Shown here in pieces: positions 584 through 59,622 of a DNA stretch of 64,000 bases. Location of the stretch: positions 208,438 through 272,437 of the IMG/VR virus record IMGVR_UViG_3300042889_001503; one strand, 5' to 3'. Within the stretch, counting starts at the first letter, position 1. The number at the start of each line of letters is the position of its first letter. The notes under the pieces were generated by a model. It saw nothing but the letters and a program-made list of their open reading frames with translations, made no database searches and had not been told where the DNA came from. The position numbers and the translations under genes were made by a program.

Positions 584-2176
584 ATGAAATTATTAGAAAG
601 TATAAAACAAATTATTACTGAGGCTTCAAAGAAAAAAATCTTAATGGATAAGATTGGTTTTAATGAGGATAATGCTGACCTATTAGATAAATTGTGTGGT
701 CCGTTATCGGTTTGGATGGCAAAAAAAATGATGGAGTTCCAACAATATAGTAGTGGAAGGTTGGGTAATCAAGTAAAAACGGGTTCTGAATTAATAGACC
801 AAATGAATAACAATGGTGTTTTAAGAATGAAACAGAGTGGTATCCAATCTATTATGGATTGGGTTCGGGTTGGTTTAAACGGTAATTTGGGCGAATATAA
901 AGATTTACCTTTTGTTGACTTGGTTTTACAGTCAAAAGAATGGCACGATAATTTGGAAATTGGACAGGGTGATATTAATTATAAAGAACAAAACCCAACT
1001 ATATTAGATTTCACTGATGAAAATGGAAATGGGTTTTATTGGGCTGATTTGAATACAAAAAACTCATCAGAAGAATGTAATAGAATGGGACATTGTGGAA
1101 GAAGTTCTTATGGATATCTTTATTCATTAAGACAAGTAATTCCGATTAACAACAAATATAAATTAAACAAATCAGTTCTAACTGCGGCAATTGGTGAGGA
1201 TGGTATTATGTATCAGTTGAAGGGTGTTAAGAACTCAAAACCAAAAGATGAATACCATCAATACATTCAACCGTTATTCTATGTGTTAGGTGGTGAAGGT
1301 GAAGAAGATGATTATCTAATTCAAGGTTTTGGAACGGAGTACGCATCTGAACAGGATTTTAAATTGTCTGACTTACCGGAACAAACAATCAAAGAATTGT
1401 ATCAAAATAGACCGGAGTTGTTCTCGTCAAGACCTATGCAACGATTGTTAGATAAGATGGGTATTATTGAAATGGAACCATTACCAACAGGATTCTCATT
1501 AGAAATTAAACCTGAGGATTTTGATGATTATGTTGATGGATGTACCTATCGTACTTATACTAATAGAACAACCGGAAAACAAACAAGAACAAGTATTTTT
1601 GTTGAAATAATGGCTGGTGATGCTTGGGATTTGTGGAATCAAGACGGTTACGAAGATTTTGGTAGTTATTTCCAATATACAGTAGACAAACCAACCGAAG
1701 AAAGATTGTGGGATATTGTTAGAAAAATGGCAGAAAGAGATGGTGTTGAATTAGATGAGGATTTAGATTTAGAAGATTCTATCAAACAAGTGGATGATGA
1801 TTGGGAAATAAGAAATGCTATTGGTGGTGCGATAAATGATGCTGACGCAAATGATTATGTAGATTTTCTACAGAAAGAAATTGAGTCGGCGTTAGAGTTT
1901 TATGGTAATGTATATGAATTTAATGACACCGGAGCCAAAATTCAAGTCGATTTAGCTAATTTAGTTGATATTGATGAAGGTTGGGTTGATGAAATATTTG
2001 AAAATCATATGAATAGGGATGGTAAGTATGATTTAGAAGGAATATTTAATGAATTATTATCTGAAAGTCATATTGATAAACCTGACTTTGACCCCGATGA
2101 CAGATGGTATCCATCACCTGATGATAGTGTTGTAAATGAAAATGTTAATTATAGATTAGATGATATAAGTATATGA
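584..2176 (+). CDS. Hypothetical protein, leader-bearing, acidic C-terminal half
   Basis: 530 aa ORF; MKLLESIKQIITEAS leader; ECNRMGHCG motif; D/E-rich C-terminus. Confidence 0.8.
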   Translation: MKLLESIKQIITEASKKKILMDKIGFNEDNADLLDKLCGPLSVWMAKKMMEFQQYSSGRLGNQVKTGSELIDQMNNNGVLRMKQSGIQSIMDWVRVGLNGNLGEYKDLPFVDLVLQSKEWHDNLEIGQGDINYKEQNPTILDFTDENGNGFYWADLNTKNSSEECNRMGHCGRSSYGYLYSLRQVIPINNKYKLNKSVLTAAIGEDGIMYQLKGVKNSKPKDEYHQYIQPLFYVLGGEGEEDDYLIQGFGTEYASEQDFKLSDLPEQTIKELYQNRPELFSSRPMQRLLDKMGIIEMEPLPTGFSLEIKPEDFDDYVDGCTYRTYTNRTTGKQTRTSIFVEIMAGDAWDLWNQDGYEDFGSYFQYTVDKPTEERLWDIVRKMAERDGVELDEDLDLEDSIKQVDDDWEIRNAIGGAINDADANDYVDFLQKEIESALEFYGNVYEFNDTGAKIQVDLANLVDIDEGWVDEIFENHMNRDGKYDLEGIFNELLSESHIDKPDFDPDDRWYPSPDDSVVNENVNYRLDDISI

Positions 2177-2883
2177 GTTTAAGTAAGGATTTAACAATTG
2201 TAATCCCCTGTAAAAATGAGGGATTAATCATAAAGAAAACTTTAGGATTGTTAAACTTGCAAAATAATATTAAAGGTGTAAATGTAATGGTTGCCGATTC
2301 TTCAACGGACGATGGATTCACACAGAAATGTATTCTTGGTTCATACCATACCAACATCAATGTAAAAATAGTTAAAGGGGGATTTCCGGCTGAAGCCAGA
2401 AACAATGGTGTCAAAAAGATAAAAACTCCTTATGTTTTATTTTTGGATGCCGACATATTCATCAACCAATATTGTTTATTAAATTGTATGGTTGAAGTTA
2501 TGAAAGAAAATGATTATCATTTGTCAACAACTAAAATGAGAACTGACGATGGTGATTACAATTATGTGTACAAATCATTTGATGTTATCCAATACTTAAC
2601 CAAATTCTCCACACCCTTTGCGGTTGGAGGATTTATGTTATTTAATTTAGAGGAATTCAATTCATTGGGAGGATTTAATCCGGATGACAAGTTCGCTGAG
2701 GATTATCATTTAAGTTCAAAAATAAAACCAAATAAGTTTTATGTGGCAAACAAAATTGTTTATACCACATCAAGACGATTCAAGAACAAAGGTTTATTCT
2801 ATATGGTTAAGATGATGATTAAATCTTGGTTTAATAGAAATAATGATGAGTTCTTCACAAAGGAACATAATTACTGGACATAA
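2173..2883 (+). CDS. Glycosyltransferase family 2
   Basis: IVIPCKNE, VADSSTD, ARNNG, LFLDAD, GGF...FAED GT-A motifs. Confidence 0.9.
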   Translation: MSLSKDLTIVIPCKNEGLIIKKTLGLLNLQNNIKGVNVMVADSSTDDGFTQKCILGSYHTNINVKIVKGGFPAEARNNGVKKIKTPYVLFLDADIFINQYCLLNCMVEVMKENDYHLSTTKMRTDDGDYNYVYKSFDVIQYLTKFSTPFAVGGFMLFNLEEFNSLGGFNPDDKFAEDYHLSSKIKPNKFYVANKIVYTTSRRFKNKGLFYMVKMMIKSWFNRNNDEFFTKEHNYWT

Positions 2884-3602
2884 TGAAATACAAAACAATA
2901 ATTCTATCAGACATTCACTTGGGTTCCAAATCAAGTAGAGCCAACGATGTTATAGAATTTCTTGAAAACAACACCACAGAGACATTAATATTAAATGGGG
3001 ATATCGTTGATGGTTGGGCACTCAAAAGAGGTGGTAAATGGACCGAAAGTCATACCAAAGTATTGAGAAAGATAATGAAGATGAGTGAGAAAGGTGTGAA
3101 TGTTATTTGGCTTAGAGGAAATCACGATGAGTTCCTAAAAGATTTCATTCCATTTCATTTATCCAATCTAACAATCACGGAGGATTATACCTTCACATCC
3201 ATAGATGGTCGTAAGATGTATGTGTTTCACGGAGATGTATTGGATGTATTCATTACCAAAGCAAAATTTTTAGCTCACATCGGTTCAATAGGTTATGATA
3301 TAGCATTATGGATGAATAGAGTTTACAACAAATATCGTGAGATGAGAGGGTTACCTTATTATTCCATCTCCAAAGATATTAAAAGTGGGGTTAAGAAAGC
3401 CGTTAATTTCATAAATGATTTTGAACATAACGCAATACTATTGGCTTACAAAAAAGGATGTGATGTTGCCGTATGTGGACACATTCATCAACCGGAGTTA
3501 AAAGACAATTATATGAATAGCGGGGATTGGTGTGAAAACTGTACCTCATTAGTGGAAACAAAAAAAGGAACGTGGAAAATAATAGAGTTTCACAAAAAAT
3601 AA
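2883..3602 (+). CDS. UDP-2,3-diacylglucosamine hydrolase-like metallophosphoesterase (LpxH/YbbF-like)
   Basis: SDIHLG, LNGDIVD, RGNHD, FHGD, CGHIH, NSGDWCE motifs. Confidence 0.85.
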   Translation: MKYKTIILSDIHLGSKSSRANDVIEFLENNTTETLILNGDIVDGWALKRGGKWTESHTKVLRKIMKMSEKGVNVIWLRGNHDEFLKDFIPFHLSNLTITEDYTFTSIDGRKMYVFHGDVLDVFITKAKFLAHIGSIGYDIALWMNRVYNKYREMRGLPYYSISKDIKSGVKKAVNFINDFEHNAILLAYKKGCDVAVCGHIHQPELKDNYMNSGDWCENCTSLVETKKGTWKIIEFHKK

Positions 3603-3603
3603 A

Positions 3604-5494: not shown

Positions 5495-5673
5495 AAATAA
5501 GGAATAAAAGATTATGTCGAAAAAGAGGGGCGGAAACCCAAATACGTCGAAAGATGGTGACAAGGAATGTTAGGCAATCCTAAAACCTAACTGCTAAGAA
5601 TCAAGTGTTATGATTCGGGTTAACAACCTCAACTTATGGTGAAACAAAAAAAGGTTCCTTCGGGAACCTTTTT
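5495..5673 (+). ncRNA. Putative structured non-coding RNA of unknown family
   Basis: Own promoter and terminator; hairpins GGG-CGGAAA-CCC, CGTC-GAAA-GATG (5545-5556), GTTAGG/CCTAAC, GAATCA/TGATTC, GGTT/AACC; only a 19-aa ORF. Confidence 0.5.
5646..5673. terminator. Bidirectional intrinsic terminator with UUCG tetraloop
   Basis: AAAAAAAGGTTCC-TTCG-GGAACCTTTTT between convergent units. Confidence 0.85.
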
Positions 5674-6157
5674 AATTGGGCATATTTCTTGTAAACACAT
5701 CACCATATCTATCAACAATAATTGTTGGGGATTCGTTAACTCTAAATTTAAGATGGTTAGGGTGTTGAATTGATGTATTTATAATTATTTTAATCCTATT
5801 ATGTGTTCCATTTAACCACATATGATAATCAATACCCGCTACATTGTCGATAACATTAATTGAACATCTAACAACACATTCTTGCATTATTCTTCTTGCT
5901 GATTGTATTATTGTTGATTCTATATCCATTATAGAATCGTTAATTTCATCTGGGTCAACTCTTTGAAATGAACTACTAGAACCGACAGACTCCTGAGAAT
6001 GGGGGTTTTTATACAAGTTAATTAAACTATTTTCACTTCTATGTAATCTTCTAATAAAATCTTGTTCACCTAAGATATTATTTACAACAATTTCATATAT
6101 TAAAATTGGTTTTGGTTCTGTATATTCCCTTAATATCTGTCTAATTAATTCCTTCAT
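5672..6157 (-). CDS. Hypothetical protein, leader-bearing
   Basis: Probable start MKELIRQILREY just after TATTTAT on minus strand (6162-6168); track start 6196. Confidence 0.7.
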   Translation of the reverse strand: MKELIRQILREYTEPKPILIYEIVVNNILGEQDFIRRLHRSENSLINLYKNPHSQESVGSSSSFQRVDPDEINDSIMDIESTIIQSARRIMQECVVRCSINVIDNVAGIDYHMWLNGTHNRIKIIINTSIQHPNHLKFRVNESPTIIVDRYGDVFTRNMPN

Positions 6158-6261
6158 AGTAATAAATATATATTTTTTCAATAAATGCTTGTGCAATTAA
6201 AGTAAATGTGTTACTTTTGTCCTATCAAACTGAAACAATAACCTTAACACATACAGAAACT

Positions 6262-6404: not shown

Positions 6405-6527
6405 ATTTAACGAGAGTAAAAAGTTAAAATAATTACCTTCGTTTTATTTTGGGGAGTAAAAAATTGATAAAATTACCCTCGTAATATAAACGAGAGTAAT
6501 TTTTACCTTCTTGTTATATTTATAGAT

Positions 6528-6896
6528 ATGGATGTTAAAATTAGTGAGGGGAAGTTAGAGTTTTTAATGGATACTATCTTTGATGGTTTGGGTGTAGATG
6601 TCAATCGTCTATCACACAATTTCCAAGTAAGAATGAGTTATTTAGAATTTTTAGCTTCTGTAACAACAAGACGAGAAATGGTTGCTAAATATGATTTTGA
6701 GTGGAATTACATAATTGTGTTTGATGATAAGTTTTATGATTTGGTTAAACCTTGGGTTTCTCGGAAAGTTTATGATGTAATTAAAGAAGATTTAATTAAG
6801 AGAATTTTTAAGGTGTATACCAAGAAATATAAATCAATATATAAAGAGGAGCCTAAATCAATTAAATTTGTTGATAAGGATTTTAATAAAGTTTAA
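6528..6896 (+). CDS. Hypothetical protein, leader-like start
   Basis: MDVKISEGKL; TATTTATA at 6517-6524. Confidence 0.7.
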   Translation: MDVKISEGKLEFLMDTIFDGLGVDVNRLSHNFQVRMSYLEFLASVTTRREMVAKYDFEWNYIIVFDDKFYDLVKPWVSRKVYDVIKEDLIKRIFKVYTKKYKSIYKEEPKSIKFVDKDFNKV

Positions 6897-9460: not shown

Positions 9461-9655
9461 ATGAAGTTAATTATAACAGAGTCACAATATGAAACCATCA
9501 ACGAGATGATTAAACTTAACATTAAGGTAGGTGATACCATTATGGGTGGAAAATTTAAGAACAAGAAGGTTGTTGTGAAGACAATCGACAAGAATGAAAA
9601 GGGGGATATTACAATAAACGGTAAACCATTGTTACGTTTTAGAATCATAGAATAA
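9461..9655 (+). CDS. Small SH3/KOW-like protein, leader-bearing
   Basis: MKLIITESQYETINEM...IKVGDTIMGGKFKNK; TATTTAT at 9450-9456. Confidence 0.7.
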   Translation: MKLIITESQYETINEMIKLNIKVGDTIMGGKFKNKKVVVKTIDKNEKGDITINGKPLLRFRIIE

Positions 9656-9984
9656 TGAAGATATTGATTAAAGAAGATAAAAGAGATAGAATTGCCAAAC
9701 GGTTATTAACTGAGGAATTCTCCGGAATGTATGAAGATGTTAATTATATGACAGATTCACGGGGGGAACACAAAACAATCGAATACCGTAATGGTGAAGG
9801 AATCATAATGATTTACGGTAATACTGATAATATTTTATATATCTGTGAAGATGTCACTCGTCCACTTAATCTACTTAGTTACACACCAAAACAACTTAAA
9901 GATGTTATTGGTGAATGGTTCTCAGAGTTTTTTGAATTACCGGTTCAATATATTCATCACGTAAATAAATCAGTGTTAAACTAA
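9655..9984 (+). CDS. Leader-bearing hypothetical protein (working name WF family)
   Basis: MKILIKEDK; C-terminal IGEWFSEFFELPV. Confidence 0.75.
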   Translation: MKILIKEDKRDRIAKRLLTEEFSGMYEDVNYMTDSRGEHKTIEYRNGEGIIMIYGNTDNILYICEDVTRPLNLLSYTPKQLKDVIGEWFSEFFELPVQYIHHVNKSVLN

Positions 9985-9985: not shown

Positions 9986-10579
9986 ATGAAAGAGTTAATT
10001 AAAAAAATATTACGAGAGGAAGTTCAGAAGAGATTTACAAAATCTAATCAAAGTTTTGAGCGTCTTATTATTAAACAGATGGAGTCTTTAATATCCGAAA
10101 CAAATAGAGTTGTTGTCCCACCTGAAGAGAATTATGGAAACTTTAATGAGGAGTGGTGTAAAGGTGATAAAATTATTATGCAGGCAAGATACTTTTTCAG
10201 TAGTGAAGATAGTGATGAAGAAAAGTTTTTTGGTGGTGATTTATATGTTAATAAAGAAGAAATTGATTTTTTATCTCAAATGTTACAGGTTAGAAAACCC
10301 TATTTACTTAATGTAATTACCGAATGGTATGATGAGAAATACGCTACCAAGTTTGGTCAAGAAACCGGACACCCGGAATTGGAGATTGATGAGACTCACG
10401 AAACGGATAGTGACCATAAATGTTATAAAATGATTAATACTTCAAACCTAAGTAGAGAATATATGATTGATTATATTGATACAAATACATTATATAAACT
10501 TAGTGAATTGGAAAAACTACCTGATGATGAGTTAGAAAGAAAATACCGAAGTGTTTATAATATCCAATTAAATAAGTAA
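9986..10579 (+). CDS. Leader-bearing hypothetical protein (WF family)
   Basis: MKELIKKILREE; ITEWYDEKY. Confidence 0.75.
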   Translation: MKELIKKILREEVQKRFTKSNQSFERLIIKQMESLISETNRVVVPPEENYGNFNEEWCKGDKIIMQARYFFSSEDSDEEKFFGGDLYVNKEEIDFLSQMLQVRKPYLLNVITEWYDEKYATKFGQETGHPELEIDETHETDSDHKCYKMINTSNLSREYMIDYIDTNTLYKLSELEKLPDDELERKYRSVYNIQLNK

Positions 10580-10959
10580 TGAAAGTATTAATAACTGAGA
10601 GCAGATTAGAAAGTTTAATCATTGATTACTTAAATGATTCGTATTACCCTGATTATGGGTGGGCAAATCCTGATGTTTATCAAAAAGATGTTAAACAATA
10701 TGGTGATGTTCTTTTCTTTGTTGATGACCGAGAATCTTATATTTATTATGGTTGTAATGCAAACGCCGGTCCGGAAGATGAGTTCTTTGCGGGTTATGGT
10801 CATCTACATAATTATAAATGTCCTTTACTGTCAATATACCCCCTTATAACTCAAAGATTGGATTCTACTTTTGGTGACATATGGAAACCAATATTCAAGA
10901 AATGGTTTGAAGATAATACAGGGTTAGAGGTTACTCAATTAACAACAAATTTCATATAA
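10579..10959 (+). CDS. Leader-bearing hypothetical protein (WF family)
   Basis: MKVLITESR; FKKWFEDNTGLEV. Confidence 0.75.
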   Translation: MKVLITESRLESLIIDYLNDSYYPDYGWANPDVYQKDVKQYGDVLFFVDDRESYIYYGCNANAGPEDEFFAGYGHLHNYKCPLLSIYPLITQRLDSTFGDIWKPIFKKWFEDNTGLEVTQLTTNFI

Positions 10960-11258
10960 TGAAAGTATTAATAAAGGAAAGTAAGTATAATAATTTAATT
11001 GAGAACTATATCCTCAATGGTTATCCTGTAGTTAAAAACGTGACATTTACAACAAAGGATGTTTACTTGGCTAGTGGTAATAAAAGTGAGAGAAGAACAA
11101 TTCAAAGAAACATCATTAATGTTGGGTTTAGAGGAGGTGAGATGCAGAATAGTCCAACACGAACATTAAGAGAAATTAGAGCTGATATTAATCGTATGTT
11201 TGGTTTGGATATTGATATGTCAGGTTCACATTGGGGTATTGAGTATAAAATGTTGTAA
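10959..11258 (+). CDS. Leader-bearing hypothetical protein
   Basis: MKVLIKESK. Confidence 0.7.
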   Translation: MKVLIKESKYNNLIENYILNGYPVVKNVTFTTKDVYLASGNKSERRTIQRNIINVGFRGGEMQNSPTRTLREIRADINRMFGLDIDMSGSHWGIEYKML

Positions 11259-11260: not shown

Positions 11261-11590
11261 ATGAGAATAGTAATCACAGAAAATAAAAGAGATATGTTAT
11301 TTAGAGAGGAGTTTAAAAACCTGTTTAATAAATTAACTCCAACAAGAGCCGGACATACCGAGAACATTATCTACATATACTTTGATGAGGTATATGATGA
11401 TAATGCGGTTACAGGGTTGGTATATAGACCAAGTAATCGTCAATTAATTATATATCCGGATTACTTTATTAGTTTAAGAATGTTTGTTTCATCTGAAGAA
11501 GAACTAAAGGAAATGATAGGAATATGTTATGAGGAATTAACTGATAAAATAGTTAGATATTCTTGGATTTGGATAGATAATGAGTTATGA
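11261..11590 (+). CDS. Leader-bearing hypothetical protein (WF-like)
   Basis: MRIVITENK. Confidence 0.7.
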   Translation: MRIVITENKRDMLFREEFKNLFNKLTPTRAGHTENIIYIYFDEVYDDNAVTGLVYRPSNRQLIIYPDYFISLRMFVSSEEELKEMIGICYEELTDKIVRYSWIWIDNEL

Positions 11591-11916
11591 AAATATTAAT
11601 CACAGAAAATAAAAGATACCAATTAGCCTACAAGATATTAGACGATATTTTGAATGGATTGACTCGTGAGGACATTGATTTAAATAAGGATTCCGTATTT
11701 AGTAACCAACAAATAATATTCAGAGATAACAGCGATGACATTTTTATGTGGTGGTCCGAAAAATACGATTTATTGGAAGTTAATAAAGTTATGTGGGAAC
11801 CACTAAGATTGTTCTCATTCAGTGGAGAAGAACTTGAAAGAGTTATTCATTGGTGGGTTAAAAATAGATTAAGAATAGAACCGGAGGAGATTAATTTAAT
11901 TGGTGACTATTATTAA
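11587..11916 (+). CDS. Leader-bearing hypothetical protein (WF family)
   Basis: MKILITENK; IHWWVKNRLRI. Confidence 0.7.
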   Translation: MKILITENKRYQLAYKILDDILNGLTREDIDLNKDSVFSNQQIIFRDNSDDIFMWWSEKYDLLEVNKVMWEPLRLFSFSGEELERVIHWWVKNRLRIEPEEINLIGDYY

Positions 11917-12415: not shown

Positions 12416-12823
12416 ATGGACATACAGGAAAACGTATATAGAATTAAACAAATAATGACTGAAGGTAAGGACGCTTATGTCTCAAGAGCTCGTTCTGACC
12501 AAGAGTATGAGGAAGAATATCCAAAATGGAAAAAAACTATAATTAAACTTTTAGAGATGGAAATAGATTCAAAGGCAGAAATTAACAATGGTAAAATAAT
12601 AGTTTTGCTTAATGGGAAAAACCTTGACAAAAATCTAATTAAATATGATAAAATAAATGAAAGATTATGGTATGATTATTCCTTACAAGAAAATTTGGAA
12701 GGTTATATACCATACGGTTATTTATCAAGACATTTTAAATACGGACTTCAGGACTTCTTCAAAAAACATTTCCCGGACTATGGTGTTAGAGAACTAACGG
12801 CTGCGAGTTTAGTAAGTTACTAA
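12416..12823 (+). CDS. Leader-bearing hypothetical protein (WF family)
   Basis: MDIQENVYRIKQIMTEG; TATTTAT at 12405-12411. Confidence 0.75.
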   Translation: MDIQENVYRIKQIMTEGKDAYVSRARSDQEYEEEYPKWKKTIIKLLEMEIDSKAEINNGKIIVLLNGKNLDKNLIKYDKINERLWYDYSLQENLEGYIPYGYLSRHFKYGLQDFFKKHFPDYGVRELTAASLVSY

Positions 12824-14133: not shown

Positions 14134-14904
14134 ATGAACTTACACGAAGATATACAAAGAATAAGACAAATGATGATTTCTGAGGAGATGGTCCAATCAG
14201 ATGCGTGGAAATCAATCAAAAAAACATTAGACATTCTTAAAAAGAAAAAGAAAGTTTTAATCTTAAGTTGTTCCAATAGATATAATTGGGATGAAAAAAA
14301 CCTTGACATACCAAAATCAAAGATGATTGCAATGTATCTTAACGATGAGTTAAAAGACTCAGTGTTAATTGATGTTTCCGAACTTAACATTGTTCCTTGT
14401 GAGGGGAATGTATCAAGAAAAGACGGGAACAGTTGTGGATTACTTAAATCTATGCTCAAAGATAAGAAAAAGAATCCATCCGGAGACCATAGATGTTGGG
14501 CAAGTTATAACAATCCAAAGGATGAGTTATGGAAGATATCCAAAGAGTTATTTGAGTCAGATGCTGTTGTATTCTTTAGTTCAATTAGATGGGGACAAAC
14601 CAATATGTTCTATCAGAATTTAATTGAGCGATTGACTTGGATTGAGAACAGACACGCAACATTGGGGGAATCAAATCTTGTTAAAGATATTGAGACAGGA
14701 TTCATTTGTGTTGGACAGAATTGGAATGGTGAGAACGTAACTGAAACACAGAAAGAAGTTCATAAGTTTTATGGATTCAAACCAAACAATGACTTGTATT
14801 GGAATTGGCAATATACCAAAGATGTGAATGATGAAACTCAAAAATCATATAAGGATTCACACAAGAAGTTTATTAAAGATACAAAATTACCTGAAGATAA
14901 ATAA
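14134..14904 (+). CDS. Flavodoxin-fold NAD(P)H-dependent FMN reductase-like protein, leader-bearing
   Basis: MNLHEDIQRIRQMMISEE leader; ILSCSNR, IVPCEGNVS, SDAVVFFSSIRWG, LIERL; TATTTATA at 14123-14130. Confidence 0.7.
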   Translation: MNLHEDIQRIRQMMISEEMVQSDAWKSIKKTLDILKKKKKVLILSCSNRYNWDEKNLDIPKSKMIAMYLNDELKDSVLIDVSELNIVPCEGNVSRKDGNSCGLLKSMLKDKKKNPSGDHRCWASYNNPKDELWKISKELFESDAVVFFSSIRWGQTNMFYQNLIERLTWIENRHATLGESNLVKDIETGFICVGQNWNGENVTETQKEVHKFYGFKPNNDLYWNWQYTKDVNDETQKSYKDSHKKFIKDTKLPEDK

Positions 14905-15629
14905 TGAACTTACGACATGACATAAAAAGAATATTAAGGGAAGAAACAAATAAAGATTTAACTTCGGTAATAGAAATGTTATTAGAGGGATTTGTTAATG
15001 ACCACAAAGACATTCTTTGTAAGGTTGAGGTTAAGCACCCGGACAAGAGAACCAAACTACCACATTCGGATAATGTTTATGAGAATTACAGAGCAACATT
15101 TTATTTAATTGCTCATAAAGGTGGGTATTCAACAACAAGAGCTCAATTGATGGATAACGTAATGAATGAGGTGTGGGATTTGGTATATAATTATACCGGA
15201 CAGAAATTAGATATGTTTACCAAACACGTAAAGAGTTGTGACGATATTATAAAAGAGAGTAAAGATAATAGTATTTCTGATATGATAAAAACTTTGGGGG
15301 TTTCTGATGCCATTAAGTATTTTGGGAATTACTACACAATTGAGCCATACTTAAAAGTGGTTGATAAAGTTAATTTTATTAAAGAAAAAGTTAGAGAATT
15401 AAGTGATGATGGTAGTGGTGTTGGTTTACACGAGATAAATGAAGAGCCACTTCATTATAGTGATGAAGATGGGGAGGAACATCAAATAGAATGGTTAGGA
15501 CTAACAAGTGTAGACATTAGTGTATATGAAGATGAGTATAGTGGTCATTTAAGGGACTATTATTCTAAGTATGAAAGTTTACCTGTGCAAATAATTGAGG
15601 AATTGGTTGAGATATTATTAAACCACTAA
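14904..15629 (+). CDS. Leader-bearing hypothetical protein (triplicated family)
   Basis: MNLRHDIKRILREE; LGVSDAIKYFG, HQIEW, YESLP shared with next two ORFs. Confidence 0.75.
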   Translation: MNLRHDIKRILREETNKDLTSVIEMLLEGFVNDHKDILCKVEVKHPDKRTKLPHSDNVYENYRATFYLIAHKGGYSTTRAQLMDNVMNEVWDLVYNYTGQKLDMFTKHVKSCDDIIKESKDNSISDMIKTLGVSDAIKYFGNYYTIEPYLKVVDKVNFIKEKVRELSDDGSGVGLHEINEEPLHYSDEDGEEHQIEWLGLTSVDISVYEDEYSGHLRDYYSKYESLPVQIIEELVEILLNH

Positions 15630-15632: not shown

Positions 15633-16178
15633 ATGAATTTAAACGAGAACATACATAGAATCCATCAGATGATGGGTGTAGTGAGTGAAGATGTGAGTCC
15701 AAACACTGTTAAAACAATAATTGATATATTAGGTATTAGAGATGCTATTAATTATTATGGGGGTTATGAGAACCTTAAAAAATATCTAAATTTGGTTTAT
15801 GATAGGAAGAGTGGTAAATGGGTGCACGCGAGTACATTACAGACCAATCCTGTTGATTTAAATACTATTACATCAAGAGAAGATAAGATTGAGTTTATTA
15901 AGGATACAATTTTTACTCAATACTACGGATTGTTTACTTATGGAGATGAAGGTTGGGACGAGAGTGATTATTCTGTGTTAGAGAGTACTGAAACTTATGA
16001 AAAGGTAGCATTTACATACTATACTGATGAATTAAATGTAACAACATTTTATAGAAATGAGAATGGTGAGTTTTCATCTCAAACCGAAAATGATGACCAT
16101 AGTGAAACAATTAAATATGAGGATTTACCGGATGATATGATTAATAACGCATTTGAGTTTATAGCTAAAAAAATTTAA
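15633..16178 (+). CDS. Leader-bearing hypothetical protein (triplicated family)
   Basis: MNLNENIHRIHQMMG; LGIRDAINYYGGY, YEDLP. Confidence 0.75.
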   Translation: MNLNENIHRIHQMMGVVSEDVSPNTVKTIIDILGIRDAINYYGGYENLKKYLNLVYDRKSGKWVHASTLQTNPVDLNTITSREDKIEFIKDTIFTQYYGLFTYGDEGWDESDYSVLESTETYEKVAFTYYTDELNVTTFYRNENGEFSSQTENDDHSETIKYEDLPDDMINNAFEFIAKKI

Positions 16179-16180: not shown

Positions 16181-16639
16181 ATGAATTTAAACGAGAACAT
16201 ACATAGAATCCATCAGATGATGGGGATTATCAATGAGAATAAAGTGGTTGATGTTGTTCAAGAAATGGGGTTATACCAAGCCACTCGTTATTTTGGGGGT
16301 TATGACAAAGTTACAAAATTAATGGGGGATTATGTGTTCTCAAATGAAGAAATGATTGATTTTATTAGAGAGGCTATAAAACATTTAGCTTACAAACATA
16401 ATTCAACCGGGATATCTACGTATGAATTAAATATGAATTCTATTCCATATGGTTCTCCTGATGAGGAGTTACATCAAATTGAGTATTTCAACCCGGAGTA
16501 TGTTACCATAGATGTTTATGGTGGTGAAGAGTATGAAAGACACAGAAGTAGTTATACTGAACGATATGAGGATTTGGATGATAATACATTAGATGAGGTT
16601 TTCCTGTTTATGGTTGACGCAGTAGAACACTACAAATAG
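16181..16639 (+). CDS. Leader-bearing hypothetical protein (triplicated family)
   Basis: First 44 nt identical to ORF 15633; MGLYQATRYFGGY, HQIEY, YEDL. Confidence 0.75.
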   Translation: MNLNENIHRIHQMMGIINENKVVDVVQEMGLYQATRYFGGYDKVTKLMGDYVFSNEEMIDFIREAIKHLAYKHNSTGISTYELNMNSIPYGSPDEELHQIEYFNPEYVTIDVYGGEEYERHRSSYTERYEDLDDNTLDEVFLFMVDAVEHYK

Positions 16640-16641: not shown

Positions 16642-17055
16642 ATGAGTTTACAAGATACCATAAGAAGAATATTAAGAGAGGAATCCTATTCTCCGGCGAG
16701 TGATGAATATACTCCGGGGGAATATATTGTTCATAAATCAAATCCTATATGGAGAGACAACATAGAACTTACCGGATTACAAACATCGGTGGGGGAATGT
16801 TATCAATCACACGTCGGTGACGATGAAGAATGTAAACCATCCATATTTGCAACAGATTCATTAGATGAAAAAGATATGTTTGATTCCACATATGACGATG
16901 ACATTTGGATTATCAATACGGAATGTGCCGGGGTTACTTGGTATAAAGACAAACATTTTGATGGTGGATATTACAAACATCATATAGTTACATTCGAGAA
17001 CATATCACCGGACTGTCTTAGATTATTATATAAAGGAACGGGGAAAAGTTATTAA
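16642..17055 (+). CDS. Putative ADP-ribosyltransferase-fold protein, leader-bearing
   Basis: MSLQDTIRRILREE; VHKS...NIELTGL...IFAT...IWII...ENISPDCL pattern. Confidence 0.45.
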   Translation: MSLQDTIRRILREESYSPASDEYTPGEYIVHKSNPIWRDNIELTGLQTSVGECYQSHVGDDEECKPSIFATDSLDEKDMFDSTYDDDIWIINTECAGVTWYKDKHFDGGYYKHHIVTFENISPDCLRLLYKGTGKSY

Positions 17056-17439: not shown

Positions 17440-17793
17440 TTAATCAATATGATATTTAGTGATATGATATCTACCACATTTATTACAATGCCAAGTAGTA
17501 TATACAACCTTTTCAACGTGTAGATTATATCTTTCCATAAACCAAGGGATAAAGATATCGTTTATATCATAACCACTTGTAACACCAAACATAGATACTA
17601 ATTGATTTGATATCTCCTCAGATAATTCAACTATTCCATTATCACGATTAAATGTGAAAGACATATCGTCACCACTATCTTTATAGATAATAAATCTATG
17701 ACCAACGGAATACTTCCTTAAGTTACCATAGTCCATATCCAACCATTTGGTAACGACATTTTTTCTCTTGTTCTCTGTGATTATTACTTTCAT
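17440..17793 (-). CDS. Leader-bearing hypothetical protein (WF family)
   Basis: MKVIITENK; FIPWFMERYNLHV; C-terminal CNKC. Confidence 0.75.
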   Translation of the reverse strand: MKVIITENKRKNVVTKWLDMDYGNLRKYSVGHRFIIYKDSGDDMSFTFNRDNGIVELSEEISNQLVSMFGVTSGYDINDIFIPWFMERYNLHVEKVVYTTWHCNKCGRYHITKYHID

Positions 17794-18095
17794 ATTTGTT
17801 CTACTCTATGACATTTCTTGGCTCTAAACCCAAACTTTTTATTACCCCAATCCAATAACAACTCACTAACTTCATCGTTATCAAATCCGAACATACTACG
17901 GATAAAATCCCATATTTCATTTAAAACATAGAATCCTTTTACTCTACTGTTGTAAAGCATTTTGAACATTCCCTTATCGGATATGAATACTCCTTCGTGT
18001 GAGGGGAATATCATCTTTTTTAAGTCGGGATATTCCTCTTCTAACCAATTAATGGCGAGACGGATTCGTTTGTTCTCTGTGATTATAATCTTCAT
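17790..18095 (-). CDS. Leader-bearing hypothetical protein (WF family)
   Basis: MKIIITENK; LLDWGNKKFGF; TATTTAT on minus strand at 18101-18107. Confidence 0.75.
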   Translation of the reverse strand: MKIIITENKRIRLAINWLEEEYPDLKKMIFPSHEGVFISDKGMFKMLYNSRVKGFYVLNEIWDFIRSMFGFDNDEVSELLLDWGNKKFGFRAKKCHRVEQI

Positions 18096-36203: not shown

Positions 36204-36596
36204 ATGAAAATTATAATAACTGAGAGTAAATTAAATCAAGCGGTCATTGATTACCTGAACGAGACATACGATACCAATAACATTGGTTGGACATATGGTA
36301 TTGATGATTGGGGTAATGAAGTGGACTACGCAATTGAATTTTATACTGACGATTATGATGAAGGTGATAATACTTTATTTAGATGGTATGGTGAAGATTA
36401 TTGGGATAGTGATGATGCTGATGGTTGGGGTGAACCATATCGTAGCGAATTAAAAAGTAAATCTCCTTTGTTAATATTTGAAAATGATGATGTTTTTATT
36501 GCTTTAAACGGTTATTTTGGTGATAAATGGAAACAACCATTTATTGATTGGTTTTGGGATAAATTCCACGTACCGGTTAAGACAATCAATAAGTAG
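36204..36596 (+). CDS. Leader-bearing acidic protein (WF family)
   Basis: MKIIITESK after TATTTAT 36193-36199; FIDWFWDKFHVPV. Confidence 0.75.
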   Translation: MKIIITESKLNQAVIDYLNETYDTNNIGWTYGIDDWGNEVDYAIEFYTDDYDEGDNTLFRWYGEDYWDSDDADGWGEPYRSELKSKSPLLIFENDDVFIALNGYFGDKWKQPFIDWFWDKFHVPVKTINK

Positions 36597-47431: not shown

Positions 47432-48199
47432 TTAAGCCAAATTCAAATTAGCACTTGTCATAACTGAAGCTACTTTATCTTGATTATGTAAATTTGTACT
47501 TTTTCTATCGGAAATTGCTTGTTTAATTAATTCTTCATCAGATTTACCTGATTTAATACCTTCATCTAAACTTTTTGCAAATTTCTTAAAATATCCCGGA
47601 CCATTCCAGCAAGCGTATGAAAAGTGCATTAATAAACTATCATTAGCCTCAACACGTTTTTTAAGTTCAGGATTTGTAAAATAGTTTTTTGAATTAGTGT
47701 CATATTGATTTTTCATTATTTTAGCGGCTAAAGTTTTTAATGTATCCTCTAGTTGACCCCCTCTATAATAATGTTTCCAAGTTTTACAAAACTGTTGCAT
47801 ACCTAAGTCAGTTTTTTCTTTATCAATAATTCTAAAAAATTCCTTACCCTCAGGTGAACTTTCAATACTACCATTGTATCTGTCAAGACCAAACATAGTT
47901 TCTGTTGATACACCCATTCCTTTAGTTGAATGTCCACATTTAGGATTCCAGTAACCACCTTCAAATTCGTCAATCACTTTTTTGGTTACGTTTTCCCATT
48001 TAGAATCAACAGACCCTGAACTTAAATCAAATTTTCCAATTGCCGATTTTATTTTATTTCCAAAATCACCGGTTTTAAGCATATTAACAATTGTATCTGC
48101 CAAACCTTTAAGTGCGTCACCGGCTCCTTGTTCGTTAATATTATATAATGATTTAATATTGTTTTTTTCTTCTTCGGTTATTAATAATTTTTTTGACAT
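47432..48199 (-). CDS. GH108-like lysozyme, leader-bearing
   Basis: MSKKLLITEEEK...INEQ leader; VIDEFEGGYWNP...ETMFGLD. Confidence 0.6.
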   Translation of the reverse strand: MSKKLLITEEEKNNIKSLYNINEQGAGDALKGLADTIVNMLKTGDFGNKIKSAIGKFDLSSGSVDSKWENVTKKVIDEFEGGYWNPKCGHSTKGMGVSTETMFGLDRYNGSIESSPEGKEFFRIIDKEKTDLGMQQFCKTWKHYYRGGQLEDTLKTLAAKIMKNQYDTNSKNYFTNPELKKRVEANDSLLMHFSYACWNGPGYFKKFAKSLDEGIKSGKSDEELIKQAISDRKSTNLHNQDKVASVMTSANLNLA

Positions 48200-57266: not shown

Positions 57267-58145
57267 ATGAATAAGAAATTAATTAAAGAAGACATTGCAA
57301 ATATGAAATACCTTTTTGGTTATAAACCGGGAAGAGTTATTTCTGAACAAGATATTGATTACACTACTGACGATTATTTAGATACTAACGACACTGAATT
57401 AGAAGAAAGTAACCCATTCAAAATTGGTGGGGGATTTGAAGATTACAATTTCCCTGATAAATTAAAAGATAGATTAAGTGACATTTATGATTTATTAGAT
57501 GAAGTAATGGAAGACCCGGATAACGACCCATCTGATTATTCAGATATGTATGATTTTGCGGGTGTAATAATTAGTCAAGTCTTAAATAAATTACGTGATG
57601 AATTTGGTGAGGATTTTGAAGAATACGAAGATGATGTTGATGATTATCTTAGAAATAATGAAGATGAAACAATATTTGATTTTTATAATAGTCGTTCAGG
57701 TTTTGACGATGAAGATGATGAAGATGAATTTGATGAGGATATGAATGAACAATATGACAACCAAAATGGTATGAATTGGGTTCAAAATACTACAATGGAT
57801 AGACAAAGTCCAATAGATGATGACAATGATGTTGAAGGGGGTGTGATATCAATCCTTAAAAAACATCGTTTACTTGATAACGTAGTAGAACCGGATGATG
57901 CAAGAATATTACTTAGAAATCAATCATCTGAAGTTGTTCAAAAGATTTTATCACTTTTACCTTCATTTACTGAATTAGGGTTTTTAGCGTTTATAAATTG
58001 TGAATCAGCAGATTTTTCTGATGTGGACATTTGTAGTTTACCTAACTTAGCTTTTATAAACTTAAATGGTACTGAAAATAATTTTGAAGAACAAGATTAT
58101 GAATGTGCTAACACAGAAGATTCACCTTTTTATTTCCTTGAATAG
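57267..58145 (+). CDS. Very acidic leader-bearing protein
   Basis: MNKKLIKEDIANMK...ISEQ; D/E-rich tracts; LRR-like C-terminal fragment; TATTTATA at 57242-57249. Confidence 0.75.
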   Translation: MNKKLIKEDIANMKYLFGYKPGRVISEQDIDYTTDDYLDTNDTELEESNPFKIGGGFEDYNFPDKLKDRLSDIYDLLDEVMEDPDNDPSDYSDMYDFAGVIISQVLNKLRDEFGEDFEEYEDDVDDYLRNNEDETIFDFYNSRSGFDDEDDEDEFDEDMNEQYDNQNGMNWVQNTTMDRQSPIDDDNDVEGGVISILKKHRLLDNVVEPDDARILLRNQSSEVVQKILSLLPSFTELGFLAFINCESADFSDVDICSLPNLAFINLNGTENNFEEQDYECANTEDSPFYFLE

Positions 58146-58186: not shown

Positions 58187-58879
58187 TTAAGATAAGTCTT
58201 TGGACATATTGATTGCAGCTTGTAAAGCCATTCCCATATCCTCAATTACTAATTTACCACGTTTCTTATATGGTATAACATAAGATATACCGGATTCTCT
58301 CATCCATTTTTTATCTAACTTGTCAGATTTACCATATAATTCAAGATACTTATATTCCCAACCAGCCCATTCCCACTCTTCGTAGTCTTCTTCTTTTGGT
58401 TTATAGTCGGCATCAAATAATCTATCCCCAATTTTAAATGTTTGACCTCCTCTGTGTGTATATCCGTGGTAACCAATTAGTTTATTATTATCGTCATATA
58501 CTTCAGCAACTCCGTGAGGATATTCCTCACAAACTTTCATTTTGTTTTGGTAATACCACCAACCACGTTCAATATCACCAACATATTCATCATCTTTGGT
58601 TAAAAATGAATTTGGTAAATGTTGTTCTCTTTTTAATTCTGGGGTATCTCCAAAATAATGAGAACCAATTTTTCCTCCGGTATATTTTTGTATAAAATAA
58701 ATACATTCCGGATTTATTAACCACCCATTTAAATCTCGGTGTGGAGTAATTCGGGACACTAGTTTTGTGAAACCTAAATTAATGTGAATTTTGTTTAATT
58801 TAGATTTTCCGGTATATTCAGGGTATTTTTCAAACTTTAATTTGATTTTCCCAATGTAGGGAGTTGTATTTTTTATCAT
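58187..58879 (-). CDS. Hypothetical protein
   Basis: Probable start MIKNTT; track start 58954. Confidence 0.7.
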   Translation of the reverse strand: MIKNTTPYIGKIKLKFEKYPEYTGKSKLNKIHINLGFTKLVSRITPHRDLNGWLINPECIYFIQKYTGGKIGSHYFGDTPELKREQHLPNSFLTKDDEYVGDIERGWWYYQNKMKVCEEYPHGVAEVYDDNNKLIGYHGYTHRGGQTFKIGDRLFDADYKPKEEDYEEWEWAGWEYKYLELYGKSDKLDKKWMRESGISYVIPYKKRGKLVIEDMGMALQAAINMSKDLS

Positions 58880-58927
58880 AATATAAAATTTTATGTAATG
58901 ATATGAAATTTCAAAGTATTTATCAAT

Positions 58928-59167
58928 ATGAAAATTAGAATAACTGAATCGCAAATAAAAAAAATCGAAGAAGGTATCTTTTGGGATGAGGAGAACTTAA
59001 ATGCGTTAAAAGGTATTACGGGAACCAAACAACAAAAAGAAGTCTTTAATGTTGAGGTAATAGAACCATTTTCAATAACATTGACGGATTCAATTCAATA
59101 TCATAGATTAGTTTATATATTAAGAACAAATGGTGTTAAATTTAAAGCTAAGGTTGATAAAATATGA
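58928..59167 (+). CDS. Leader-bearing hypothetical protein
   Basis: MKIRITESQIKKIEE; TATTTAT at 58917-58923. Confidence 0.7.
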   Translation: MKIRITESQIKKIEEGIFWDEENLNALKGITGTKQQKEVFNVEVIEPFSITLTDSIQYHRLVYILRTNGVKFKAKVDKI

Positions 59168-59622
59168 AACTAATAATTACAGAAAGTCAGTATAGAAAAA
59201 TAATCAAAGAAGATACTCAATTAGAATACACTAGTGAATTTTTGGATGGTGTTACGGTTGTTGTGGTATTTGAGGATGACCCATTATACGAACAAGTTAA
59301 AGGATACTTTGAGGAGTATGGGTTTGGGTTTATGGTTCCCGGTAAGAATTTAATCATTATTGATGGTGAAATATTAGTGGGACAACCGGACGCTAAAAGT
59401 GTTTTAAAATTTATTGAAGCTCACGAGGTTACCCACGTATTATTAAGTCACGATGGTCCAAGAGATGAGAAAGATGAGTTGGAGGCTGACTTGGGAGCTT
59501 ACCTATTATTACAAGATAAAGGATATTACGAATCAATCCGAACATTACTAGACCACTTCCAAGAAAGACACGGAGTTGAGTTTGATGAGAGTATGTTGGA
59601 CGATATAAAAAATAGAATGTAA
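59164..59622 (+). CDS. Leader-bearing HExxH metallopeptidase-like protein
   Basis: MKLIITESQYRKIIKED; IEAHEVTH...ELEAD. Confidence 0.65.
   Translation: MKLIITESQYRKIIKEDTQLEYTSEFLDGVTVVVVFEDDPLYEQVKGYFEEYGFGFMVPGKNLIIIDGEILVGQPDAKSVLKFIEAHEVTHVLLSHDGPRDEKDELEADLGAYLLLQDKGYYESIRTLLDHFQERHGVEFDESMLDDIKNRM

What the first reader, a model, noticed from the sequence alone, without database searches (positions are those of the whole stretch)
584..59622. A shared N-terminal 'address label' on about 34 unrelated proteins: candidate capsid-cargo loading system
Seen: I count about 34 ORFs with one of three related leaders. Type A is MK(I/V/L)(I/L)ITE(S/N/R)(Q/K) (e.g. 9461, 10579, 11261, 11587, 17793-, 18095-, 25622, 25962, 26324, 26643, 30497, 31631, 36204, 37108, 58928, 59164). 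Type B is M(N/S)LxExIxRI..M / MKELIK.ILREE (6157-, 9986, 12416, 14134, 14904, 15633, 16181, 16642, 57267). Type C is MKKI..LTE(S/G)(D/E)L (26992, 27489). Most have a second I/L-x-E site 8-15 residues later (INEM, ILKED, IINEQ, LDEA, IIKED, ISEE), after which the sequences diverge completely. The cargo includes a GH108-like lysozyme, an ART-fold protein, a flavodoxin-fold reductase, HExxH proteases and very acidic proteins. Known: T4 internal proteins and Alt carry N-terminal capsid-targeting peptides removed by prohead protease gp21, which cuts after Glu in I/L-x-E; phiKZ gp175 similarly cuts after Glu. Inference: a modular signal that lets the phage package and inject dozens of effectors, with new cargo added by recombination at the conserved 5' DNA.
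Basis: partly seen in the sequence, partly recalled or inferred. Interest (0 to 1): 0.82.

Follow-up and report, generated by a model that had tools for sequence, protein, structure and literature searches.

The report
Expanded capsid-targeting leader peptides, T4-like phage
About a quarter of the genes in this stretch of an uncultured ~318-kb T4-related phage start with one of a few short conserved peptides ending in the motif that T4-type head proteases cut, and the phage encodes such a protease, so they are most likely removable address labels that load many different proteins into the capsid: a known T4 trick used on a far larger scale, still unproven by experiment.

Summary
Thirty window genes fall into conserved N-terminal leader classes (19 A, 7 B, 2 C, 2 D/E) and three more are variants. 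Conservation is at the amino-acid level, not the DNA level. The only invariant residues after Met in type A are Ile5 and Glu7, an I-x-E. In three cargo families the peptide upstream varies in type and length while an (L/I)-x-E junction before the conserved domain is kept (64 of 64 distinct leaders in one family). Walking out of the window, I found that the same phage has a T4-type head module: portal gp20, a gp21-family prohead protease with its His and Ser, an acidic scaffold, and a gp23 capsid protein whose propeptide ends I-N-E|A, aligned with T4's cut site. T4 gp21 cuts after L/I-X-E, and T4's 10-residue capsid targeting sequence works this way. Two structure models show the MKIIIT tip as a loose tail. 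Leader genes share a promoter motif with head genes. Two cultured relatives lack the expansion. Not supported: "all unrelated" (12 genes are paralogues), the lysozyme and ART labels, and recombination at conserved 5' DNA. Packaging, cleavage and injection remain untested. Verdict: a new, greatly expanded variant of the T4 capsid-targeting system.

The parts
584..2176 (+). 530-aa protein, variant leader MKLLE|SIKQIITE|AS (two sites)
   Evidence: TATTTAT at 571-577
5672..6157 (-). 161-aa protein, type B-like leader MKELIRQILRE|Y
   Evidence: TATTTAT at 6162-6168 on the minus strand, 4 nt before the ATG
6528..6896 (+). 122-aa protein, degenerate A-like leader MDVKISE|G
   Evidence: TATTTAT at 6517-6523
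9461..9655 (+). 64-aa protein, type A leader MKLIITE|SQYETINE|M
   Evidence: terminator hairpin, then TATTTAT at 9450-9456
9655..9984 (+). 109-aa protein, type A (MKILIKE|D), small paralogue family
9986..10579 (+). 197-aa protein, type B leader MKELIKKILRE|E
   Evidence: resembles the T4 gp24 propeptide MAKINELLRE|S
10579..10959 (+). 126-aa protein, type A, small paralogue family
10959..11258 (+). 99-aa protein, type A (MKVLIKE|S), small paralogue family
11261..11590 (+). 109-aa protein, type A (MRIVITE|N), small paralogue family
11587..11916 (+). 109-aa protein, type A (MKILITE|N), small paralogue family
12416..12823 (+). 135-aa protein, type B leader MDIQE|NVYRIKQIM
   Evidence: TATTTAT at 12405-12411
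14134..14904 (+). 256-aa flavodoxin/WrbA-like protein, type B leader MNLHE|DIQRIRQMMISE|E; fold starts near residue 36
   Evidence: TATTTAT at 14123-14129
14904..15629 (+). 241-aa protein, type B leader MNLRHDIKRILRE|E; paralogue of 15633 and 16181
15633..16178 (+). 181-aa protein, type B leader MNLNE|NIHRIHQMMG
   Evidence: no family found
16181..16639 (+). 152-aa protein, type B leader MNLNE|NIHRIHQMMGIINE|N
16642..17055 (+). 137-aa protein, type B leader MSLQDTIRRILRE|E
   Evidence: orthologue leader kept in L021
17440..17793 (-). 117-aa protein, type A, small paralogue family
17790..18095 (-). 101-aa protein, type A, small paralogue family
   Evidence: TATTTAT at 18101-18107 on the minus strand
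25622..25927 (+). 101-aa protein, type A (MKIIITE|E)
25962..26327 (+). 121-aa protein, type A (MRIIITE|S)
   Evidence: TATTTAT at 25950-25956
26324..26662 (+). 112-aa protein, type A (MKIIITE|S)
26643..26963 (+). 106-aa protein, type A (MKIIITE|RQNNLLME|D)
26992..27483 (+). 163-aa protein, type C leader MKKIVRLTE|GELTNLIKRILKE|D
27489..27950 (+). 153-aa protein, type C leader MKKKIIKLTE|SDLKNIVMRIINE|Q
30497..30817 (+). 106-aa protein, type A (MRVIITE|D), small paralogue family
31062..31634 (+). 190-aa DUF5872 protein, type A leader MKIVITE|RQEDLLFSLLTE|GENKPTNP (start is an in-frame Met inside ORF 30819-31634)
   Evidence: the LTE|G junction is kept in relatives with a different upstream peptide
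31631..32002 (+). 123-aa protein, type A (MKIVITE|S ... DLLTE|AEYQGRK)
36204..36596 (+). 130-aa protein, type A, small paralogue family; modelled
   Evidence: residues 1-6 are coil, helix from residue 7; TATTTAT at 36193-36199
37108..38226 (+). 372-aa HExxH protein, type A leader MKIKITE|TQYKNLDE|AVGVP; best-sampled junction
   Evidence: TATTTAT at 37097-37103 after a terminator hairpin
47432..48199 (-). 255-aa protein, type D leader MSKKLLITE|EEKNNIKSLYNINE|QGAG
   Evidence: the same class occurs outside the window
57267..58145 (+). 292-aa protein, type E leader MNKKLIKE|DIANMKYLFGYKPGRVISE|Q
   Evidence: a paralogous leader at L050:13103
58928..59167 (+). 79-aa protein, type A (MKIRITE|SQIKKIEE|G)
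   Evidence: TATTTAT at 58917-58923
59164..59622 (+). 152-aa protein, type A (MKLIITE|SQYRKIIKE|D), weak metalloprotease-like hit
   Evidence: phrog_87 at E = 6.7e-4

Best explanation
The leaders are N-terminal propeptides of the T4 capsid-targeting-sequence kind. Each is 7 to about 30 residues long. It has a hydrophobic or amphipathic head that would dock the new protein to the scaffolding core of the prohead, and one or two (I/L)-x-E sites at which the phage's gp21-family prohead protease would cut it off during head maturation. That would leave the mature cargo inside the capsid, available for ejection into the next host cell. Shown here: the leaders exist in several conserved classes; selection acts on the peptide; the leader tip lies outside the folded domain; the (L/I)-x-E junction is conserved while the rest of the leader varies; the same genome encodes a T4-type portal, protease, scaffold and capsid protein; and the capsid protein keeps the matching site. 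Inferred: that the protease keeps T4's specificity, that the leaders bind the core, that the proteins are packaged, cut and ejected, and that the shared promoter motif means late co-expression.
For: (1) Peptide-level selection. Codons vary freely, Ser uses both TCN and AGY, and Ile5 is invariant while its third base is only 50% conserved. Synonymous usage matches the genome, with only a mild excess of the Ile codon ATA. (2) In type A the only invariant residues after Met are Ile5 and Glu7, which would be P3 and P1 of I-x-E. In T4's 10-residue CTS, residues 8 and 10 govern processing and residues 4 and 7 govern targeting (PMC9026906). (3) Junction rule. In the 372-aa HExxH family, 64 distinct leaders of 5-19 residues have P3 = L (44) or I (20), P1 = E in 64 of 64, P1' = A in 55, and a variable P2. 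The DUF5872 family keeps LTE|G behind different upstream peptides. The flavodoxin-like family keeps (I/L)xE|E(M/L)VQSDAWK behind two different heads. (4) The same phage encodes Portal_T4 (3e-79) and Peptidase_S77 (4.9e-24). The protease matches PDB 5JBL, T4 gp21, at 2e-15 and is 35% identical to it, with the ELNHP His and GxSSRG Ser present. It also encodes an acidic scaffold and Gp23 (1.3e-74), in T4 gene order. (5) T4 gp21 cuts after L/I-X-E (PMC9026906). This phage's capsid protein has an invariant LINE|A in 22 variants, aligned with T4 E65|A66 (T4 mature chain 456 aa vs 521-aa precursor). T4 gp24's 10-residue propeptide MAKINELLRE resembles the type B ...ILRE leaders. (6) Proteins in the gp67/68 position and the scaffold are rich in [IL]xE (2.4-4.6 per 100 aa, vs about 1.0-1.6 in the other head-module proteins), as are T4 gp22, gp68 and gp21. 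(7) Both structure models (pLDDT 89.6 and 90.9) leave residues 1-6 as low-confidence coil, with a helix from residue 7. Cellular flavodoxin homologues align only from about residue 36. (8) The TATTTAT(A) motif precedes leader genes (14 of 23 vs 51 of 263; odds ratio 6.5, p = 4e-5) and also the portal, protease, scaffold and core-like genes. (9) Leader genes sit inside the head module too. (10) The leader classes recur across the clade.
Against: There is no virion proteome, no N-terminal sequencing and no cultured member, so packaging, cleavage and ejection are all inferred. [IL]xE is a low-information motif. P1' is Ala in the capsid and HExxH proteins but Q, S, N, E, D, R or K elsewhere, and the tolerance of this protease is unknown. 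In the small paralogue family, residues 8-25 are part of the fold, so only a 7-residue peptide could be removed. Forty-five or more different cargo proteins in about half the genome is far more than T4's handful. The leaders show no sequence similarity to the T4 CTS beyond an MK start and an I/L-x-E end. The promoter's timing is unknown. The RNA-library data were uninformative. Leader proteins are on average acidic (median pI 4.8), whereas T4-type internal proteins are described as basic (PMC9026906).
Confidence: 0.6

Rival explanations
1. The leaders are retained N-terminal docking or assembly motifs. They would bind a shared partner, such as a phage chaperone (DnaK/DnaJ), an assembly factor or each other, and are neither cut off nor used for packaging.
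For: The exposed hydrophobic tip MK-(I/L/V)3 preceded by a basic residue would suit a chaperone-binding site (own knowledge of DnaK-binding preferences). The phage encodes DnaK and DnaJ. T4's capsid protein N-terminus is reported to direct proteins to GroEL (reference 29 cited in PMC10052503). The leader is more conserved than the cargo, as expected for any shared partner.
Against: This does not explain why the two invariant residues are exactly I-x-E. It also does not explain why an (L/I)-x-E junction is kept in front of the conserved domain while the upstream peptide changes type and length, or why the same motif marks the capsid protein's propeptide end. Acidic residues next to the hydrophobic core are unfavourable for DnaK binding (own knowledge).
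Confidence: 0.17
2. The shared N-termini simply reflect common descent: one or a few gene families expanded by duplication and kept their first residues.
For: Nine proteins of 100-130 aa form one diverged family with weak full-length similarity, and 14904/15633/16181 are paralogues.
Against: The other roughly 20 genes share only residues 1-9. They include different folds and sizes: flavodoxin-like, HExxH, DUF5872, a peptidoglycan-binding protein, and proteins of 455-580 aa. Orthologues in one family carry different leader classes. The leader lies outside the fold.
Confidence: 0.08
3. The leaders are N-terminal degradation or unfolding tags read by a Clp-type machine, with the phage's ClpP acting with a host or phage unfoldase, to time the removal of these proteins.
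For: ClpP (3.3e-52) lies next to the 372-aa gene. An AAA+ Clp-family protein is encoded elsewhere in the genome. One class of ClpX N-terminal signals is Met-basic-hydrophobic x3 (own recollection of the published classes, not checked here).
Against: The phage AAA+ protein has no IG[F/L/M] ClpP-docking tripeptide, so it looks ClpB-like. A degron does not predict the conserved (L/I)-x-E junction, the second sites, or the match to the capsid protein's cleavage site. The multiple unrelated leader classes all converge on x-E.
Confidence: 0.06
4. The conservation is a nucleotide-level element, such as a translation-start, leaderless-mRNA or promoter signal, rather than a peptide signal.
For: Many leader genes have a promoter-like TATTTAT only 4-5 nt before the ATG, so the coding start would be the 5' end of the mRNA. 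The leader codons are AT-rich.
Against: Genes inside operons, without the motif, carry the same leaders. Third codon positions vary, Ser uses two codon families, and synonymous usage equals genome usage. Median nucleotide identity over the first 27 nt is 70%, with identical runs of 6 nt.
Confidence: 0.03

Closest known systems
Phage T4 capsid targeting sequence (CTS) of internal proteins IPI/IPII/IPIII and Alt, and the 10-residue propeptide of vertex protein gp24, all removed by prohead protease gp21
   Same: Short N-terminal peptide (10-20 residues in T4) on otherwise unrelated proteins. It ends in L/I-x-E. The genome has a gp21-family protease, a gp20 portal, an acidic scaffold and a gp23 capsid protein in T4 order. 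The capsid protein's own propeptide ends at the aligned site. Cargo genes are variable between relatives.
   Different: Scale: at least 33 genes in 64 kb and at least 45 in 150 kb, against a handful in T4. There are at least five conserved leader classes rather than one, often with two sites. There is no sequence similarity to the T4 CTS itself. The cargo proteins are mostly acidic. Many cargoes are small paralogous proteins. Nothing has been shown experimentally.
Propeptides of head and ejection proteins in giant phages phiKZ, 201phi2-1 and SPN3US (proteases gp175, gp268, gp245)
   Same: Large phage with many head proteins processed after Glu by a diverged gp21 homologue. Multiple sites occur within a propeptide, and paralogous cargo share identical N-termini (PMC10052503, PMC5694885).
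   Different: Those proteases use A/S/G-x-E and most of their propeptides are 100-250 residues long. Here the motif is the T4-type L/I-x-E, the leaders are 7-30 residues, and the head module is T4-like at Pfam level rather than only by remote profile.
Cultured relatives Flavobacterium phage vB_FspM_immuto and Microcystis phage Mel-JY01
   Same: Closest capsid proteins (41.5% and 42.5% identity), the same T4-like head module, and a capsid propeptide ending x-x-E|A.
   Different: Neither has conserved leader classes. [IL]xE in the first 12 residues is at background in both (14% and 13%). Only 150 kb of each genome was scanned.

Membership tests
T4-type capsid targeting / gp21-processed propeptide system | A gp21-family (Peptidase S77) prohead protease with catalytic His and Ser is encoded in the same genome | tested here: met
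   L053:19061-19786: Pfam Peptidase_S77 at 4.9e-24; PDB 5JBL at 2.1e-15; 35% identity to T4 gp21, with ELNHP and GISSRG conserved. The gene lies on the same 272-kb contig as the window.
T4-type capsid targeting / gp21-processed propeptide system | T4-type prohead: gp20 portal, acidic scaffolding core and gp23 capsid protein | tested here: met
   Portal_T4 at 3e-79 and Gp23 at 1.3e-74. The scaffold is assigned only by position, acidity and [IL]xE density.
T4-type capsid targeting / gp21-processed propeptide system | The signal is a short N-terminal peptide ending in L/I-x-E, just before the mature domain | tested here: met
   Type A has I5 and E7 invariant. Junction P3 is L or I and P1 is E in 64 of 64 distinct leaders of one family, and the same rule holds in two more families.
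T4-type capsid targeting / gp21-processed propeptide system | The protease of this phage uses the L/I-x-E specificity | tested here: inconclusive
   Only by homology. The capsid protein's LINE|A aligns with T4's experimentally known E65|A66, and core-like proteins are rich in the motif. There is no biochemical test.
T4-type capsid targeting / gp21-processed propeptide system | The signal is dispensable for the fold of the cargo (an add-on) | tested here: met
   Two AlphaFold models leave residues 1-6 as coil. Cellular flavodoxin homologues start at about residue 36. Leader type is swapped among orthologues.
T4-type capsid targeting / gp21-processed propeptide system | Cargo is physically incorporated into proheads, processed, and present in virions | not testable with these tools
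   No cultured member and no proteome. The RNA-library contigs were uninformative.
T4-type capsid targeting / gp21-processed propeptide system | Cargo genes are expressed together with head genes | tested here: inconclusive
   A shared TATTTAT(A) upstream motif. Timing was not measured.
phiKZ-like giant-phage propeptide system | A/S/G-x-E cleavage motif and long (over 100 residue) propeptides | tested here: not met
   Junction P3 is L or I in 64 of 64 leaders, and leaders are 5-30 residues long. The motif for phiKZ and SPN3US comes from PMC5694885 and PMC10052503.
Clp N-terminal degron | A phage-encoded ClpP-docking unfoldase that could read the tags | tested here: not met
   The 681-aa AAA+ protein has two Walker A motifs but no IG[FLM] tripeptide. 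A host ClpX or ClpA cannot be excluded.

The most novel reading that the evidence does not exclude
The five or more leader classes are distinct 'postcodes'. Each class would dock to a different partner among the unusually many acidic core-like proteins of this phage (503, 450, 462, 312, 238 and 229 aa). In this way a ~318-kb T4-superfamily phage would sort perhaps 50-100 different proteins into defined places, amounts or ejection order inside its capsid: a programmable multi-address protein-delivery system rather than a single CTS.
Probability: 0.15. Interest if true: 0.88.

Novelty: new variant of a known kind. Interest (0 to 1): 0.66.

Why it matters
If these leaders work as inferred, a simple sequence rule gives a ready-made catalogue of the proteins that an abundant, uncultured freshwater phage clade carries into its host. 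The rule is an N-terminal class motif plus (I/L)-x-E. Packaged and ejected proteins are where T4 keeps anti-restriction and host-takeover factors, so the list is a shortlist for new counter-defence or takeover functions. It includes HExxH proteins, a flavodoxin-like enzyme, peptidoglycan-binding proteins and many unknowns. It would also show that the T4 capsid-targeting principle, so far known from a few proteins, can be scaled to a sizeable fraction of a genome. Finally, it would offer several new short tags for loading foreign proteins into T4-type capsids.

Tried and rejected
- Nucleotide-level element: rejected by codon analysis.
- Recombination at conserved 5' DNA: rejected. Identical runs between leader DNAs have a median of 6 nt.
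- Core beta-strand explanation for MKIIIT: rejected by two confident models.
- ClpP next to the 372-aa gene as the maturation protease: set aside once a true gp21 homologue was found.
- Fold search of the 372-aa HExxH protein: no PDB match, and only uncharacterised viral proteins.
- Pfam, PHROGs and ESM-atlas searches on most cargo proteins: nothing, so the 'GH108' and 'ART' labels are unsupported.
- Megablast and tblastn of window proteins against GenBank phages: no match. DnaK hits only point to huge uncultured phages.
- Cultured relatives immuto and Mel-JY01 (150 kb of each scanned): no leader system, so no existing proteome can be used.
- Metatranscriptome contigs: fragmentary, from relatives, and without transcript-start information.
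- tRNA and Rfam scans of the window: nothing.
- Genome walk: only about 200 kb of the ~318-kb genome was seen, so the census is incomplete and no gp24-type vertex gene was located.
- Not run: the profile search of protein representatives and the metagenome scan. Neither gives genomic context, and neither would have changed the verdict.

Full report
**What the window is.** The window is AT-rich (30-36% GC) and densely coded with small genes. It is the last 64,000 nt of a 272,437-nt metagenomic contig (JGI Ga0453676_0000003 = IMGVR_UViG_3300042889_001503). A 159,912-nt contig of the same phage bridges that contig's end to its start with about 46 kb of extra sequence, so the genome is about 318 kb, like relatives of 308-318 kb. 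Nothing in GenBank phages is close at the DNA level, nor for the two window proteins tested. The window holds no tRNA or Rfam RNA gene.

**The observation.**
- With a rough set of 133 genes, 30 fall into conserved classes and three more (584, 5672-6157 minus strand, 6528) are clear variants.
  - Class A (19 genes): MK(I/L/V)(I/L/V)I(T/K)E(S/N)(Q/K).
  - Class B (7 genes): MNLxExIxRIxQMM, or ...ILRE.
  - Class C (2 genes): MKK..(K/R)LTE(S/G)(D/E)L..I..RI(I/L)xE.
  - Classes D/E (2 genes).
- All 19 six-frame matches to the strict type A pattern are at ORF starts.
- In a 150-kb composite of the same phage (286 genes), the Glu of [IL]xE sits at residue 7 in 29 genes, residue 9 in 12 and residue 15 in 10, against about 3 per position elsewhere.
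- A second site with Glu at residues 11-30 is present in 20 of 30 leader genes, against 19 of 103 others.
- The classes recur in 35 related loci (113 type A, 17 type C, 2 type B) and beyond the window. Further classes there end in (I/L/V)-x-E-Q followed by linker-like sequence.

**Are the cargoes unrelated?** Partly.
- With the first 25 residues removed, BLAST links only 14904, 15633 and 16181.
- Full-length alignment shows that nine proteins of 100-130 aa form one diverged family.
- The others share only residues 1-9.
- Identified cargo domains are:
  - an HExxH family (37108; invariant H152, E153, H156, D159, E202);
  - a flavodoxin/WrbA-like protein (14134);
  - DUF5872 (31062);
  - a weak metalloprotease-like hit (59164);
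  - outside the window, a peptidoglycan-binding protein and proteins of 455-580 aa.
- No support was found for a GH108 lysozyme or an ART fold.

**Peptide or DNA?**
- Codons in the leaders vary freely and Ser uses both codon families.
- Ile5 is invariant while its third base is only 50% conserved.
- Synonymous usage equals genome usage, apart from a mild excess of the Ile codon ATA.
- Leader DNAs share identical in-register runs with a median of 6 nt.
- So the conserved object is the peptide, and the leader DNA is a poor substrate for homologous recombination.

**The junction rule.**
- The 372-aa family has 266 homologues. Among the 120 retrieved there are 64 distinct leaders of 5-19 residues, of type A, of type B, or minimal. 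The mature domain always begins after (L 44 / I 20)-x-E, with Glu in 64 of 64 and Ala next in 55.
- The DUF5872 family keeps L-T-E|G-(E/K)-N-K-P-T-N-P even where the upstream peptide is unrelated.
- The flavodoxin-like family has two different heads that converge on (I/L)-x-E|E-(M/L)-V-Q-S-D-A-W-K.
- In type A, the invariant residues are exactly I-x-E.

**Structure.**
- AlphaFold models of the 372-aa protein (pLDDT 89.6) and of the 130-aa family (pLDDT 90.9) both leave residues 1-6 as low-confidence coil, with the first helix starting at residue 7. The hydrophobic tip is therefore an exposed tail, not a core strand.
- Cellular flavodoxin homologues align only from about residue 36.
- The 372-aa fold has no PDB match.

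**The protease.** Walking outwards reached the head module, about 65-90 kb beyond the window's end.
- It runs, in order:
  - the large terminase (Terminase_6N);
  - DUF285 repeat proteins;
  - a portal (Portal_T4, 3e-79);
  - two small [IL]xE-rich proteins;
  - a 241-aa Peptidase_S77 protease;
  - a 503-aa very acidic scaffold-like protein;
  - a 623-aa Gp23 capsid protein (1.3e-74).
  This is the T4 gene order.
- The protease hits Pfam at 4.9e-24 and PDB 5JBL (T4 gp21) at 2e-15. It is 35% identical to T4 gp21, with the His and Ser present.
- T4 gp21 cuts after L/I-X-E. The T4 CTS is the first 10 residues of IPIII, with residues 4 and 7 needed for targeting and residues 8 and 10 for processing. 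It carries foreign proteins into the head and is then removed (PMC9026906, PMC10229621, PMC5694885).
- The capsid protein's N-terminal region ends in an invariant L-I-N-E|A in 22 variants. This aligns with T4's E65|A66 and immuto's I-V-S-E|A. The T4 mature chain in PDB is 65 residues shorter than the precursor.
- T4 gp24's 10-residue propeptide MAKINELLRE resembles the type B leaders.
- Core-like proteins are rich in the motif, as in T4.

**Context.**
- A motif (a/t)TATTTAT(A) lies exactly 4-5 nt before the ATG of operon-first genes, often after a terminator hairpin. It is associated with leader genes (odds ratio 6.5, p = 4e-5).
- The same motif lies 13-35 nt before the portal, protease, scaffold and core-like genes. 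This suggests co-expression with head genes, but timing is unknown.
- Leader genes also sit within the head module.
- The cultured relatives immuto and Mel-JY01 have the same head module but no leader expansion.
- Host hints point weakly to Bacteroidota: MAG labels, the absence of Shine-Dalgarno sequences upstream of the starts examined, and kinship with a Flavobacterium phage.

**Rivals.**
- A retained docking or chaperone tag, a Clp degron and plain paralogy each explain part of the picture. None predicts the conserved (L/I)-x-E junction or its match to the capsid protein's own site.
- The phage's AAA+ protein lacks a ClpP-docking loop.
- The nucleotide-element idea is refuted.

**Verdict.** It is best described as a greatly expanded, multi-class variant of the T4 capsid-targeting system in an uncultured clade of about 300-kb T4-superfamily phages. 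A literature search found no description of such a repertoire.

Noticed in passing
window 9450-9456, 12405-12411, 14123-14129, 25950-25956, 36193-36199, 37097-37103, 58917-58923 and 9 more; also L053 and L135 upstream of head genes: A promoter-like (a/t)TATTTAT(A) lies exactly 4-5 nt before the ATG of operon-first genes, which implies leaderless or near-leaderless mRNAs. The same motif lies 13-35 nt before the portal, protease and scaffold genes. It reads as the reverse complement of T4's late promoter TATAAATA (T4 sequence from memory). A sigma70-like gene lies at L051:2911-3711.
   Followed up: partly
window 58187-58879 (-): A 230-aa protein carries a precomputed Pfam hit to Tad6 (PF25188), an anti-defence family.
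   Followed up: no
window 60026-61894, 38579-39313 (-); L048:1870-2790; L050:14229-16274 (-); L050:8231-8668: The phage encodes a full proteostasis kit: DnaK, ClpP, DnaJ, a ClpB-like double-AAA+ protein without a ClpP-docking loop, and SmpB.
   Followed up: partly
window 44703-45974 and 42364-43026: ThyA is unusually long (423 aa; the Pfam match is split into two stretches). A 220-aa neighbour shares 37% identity over 72 residues with it, so it may be a ThyA-derived fragment or paralogue.
   Followed up: no
L135:17057-18280: An HExxH protein encoded near the capsid gene begins MNKNNKIQIKE|ATGESGTRGSF, which mimics the capsid protein's predicted mature N-terminus INE|ATGEGSNGSF.
   Followed up: no
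L053:12469-15591: A 1040-aa protein is made largely of Pro/Thr repeats and has a C-terminal end that looks Hint/intein-like (...NNVLTHNK).
   Followed up: no
L052:8249-12330; L043:10615-11304: Four additional extremely acidic, low-complexity proteins (450, 312, 462 and 229 aa) are encoded besides the scaffold, three of them just upstream of the terminase. They may be extra core or internal proteins.
   Followed up: no
window 30819-31061: The DUF5872 gene's ORF extends 81 codons upstream of its type A leader Met. Relatives L007 and L008 have an unrelated N-terminal peptide that still ends in LTE|G.
   Followed up: partly
window 11260, 13804, 14134: Contigs of 90-99% identical relatives in freshwater RNA libraries diverge from the window exactly at gene starts, which is typical gene-cassette mosaicism.
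   Followed up: no
window 53481-54308, 55202-56323, 56399-57223: Host-like genes: a 275-aa tRNA-synt_2 protein, a double-PAS protein, and an endolysin-like protein with PG_binding_1 plus a GH19 fragment.
   Followed up: no
L220-L234: Capsid-protein relatives (50-74% identity) are binned into MAGs with many labels. Bacteroidetes and Bacteroidales labels recur, including a Lake Erken bin. This is a weak host hint and an example of phage contigs binned into MAGs.
   Followed up: no
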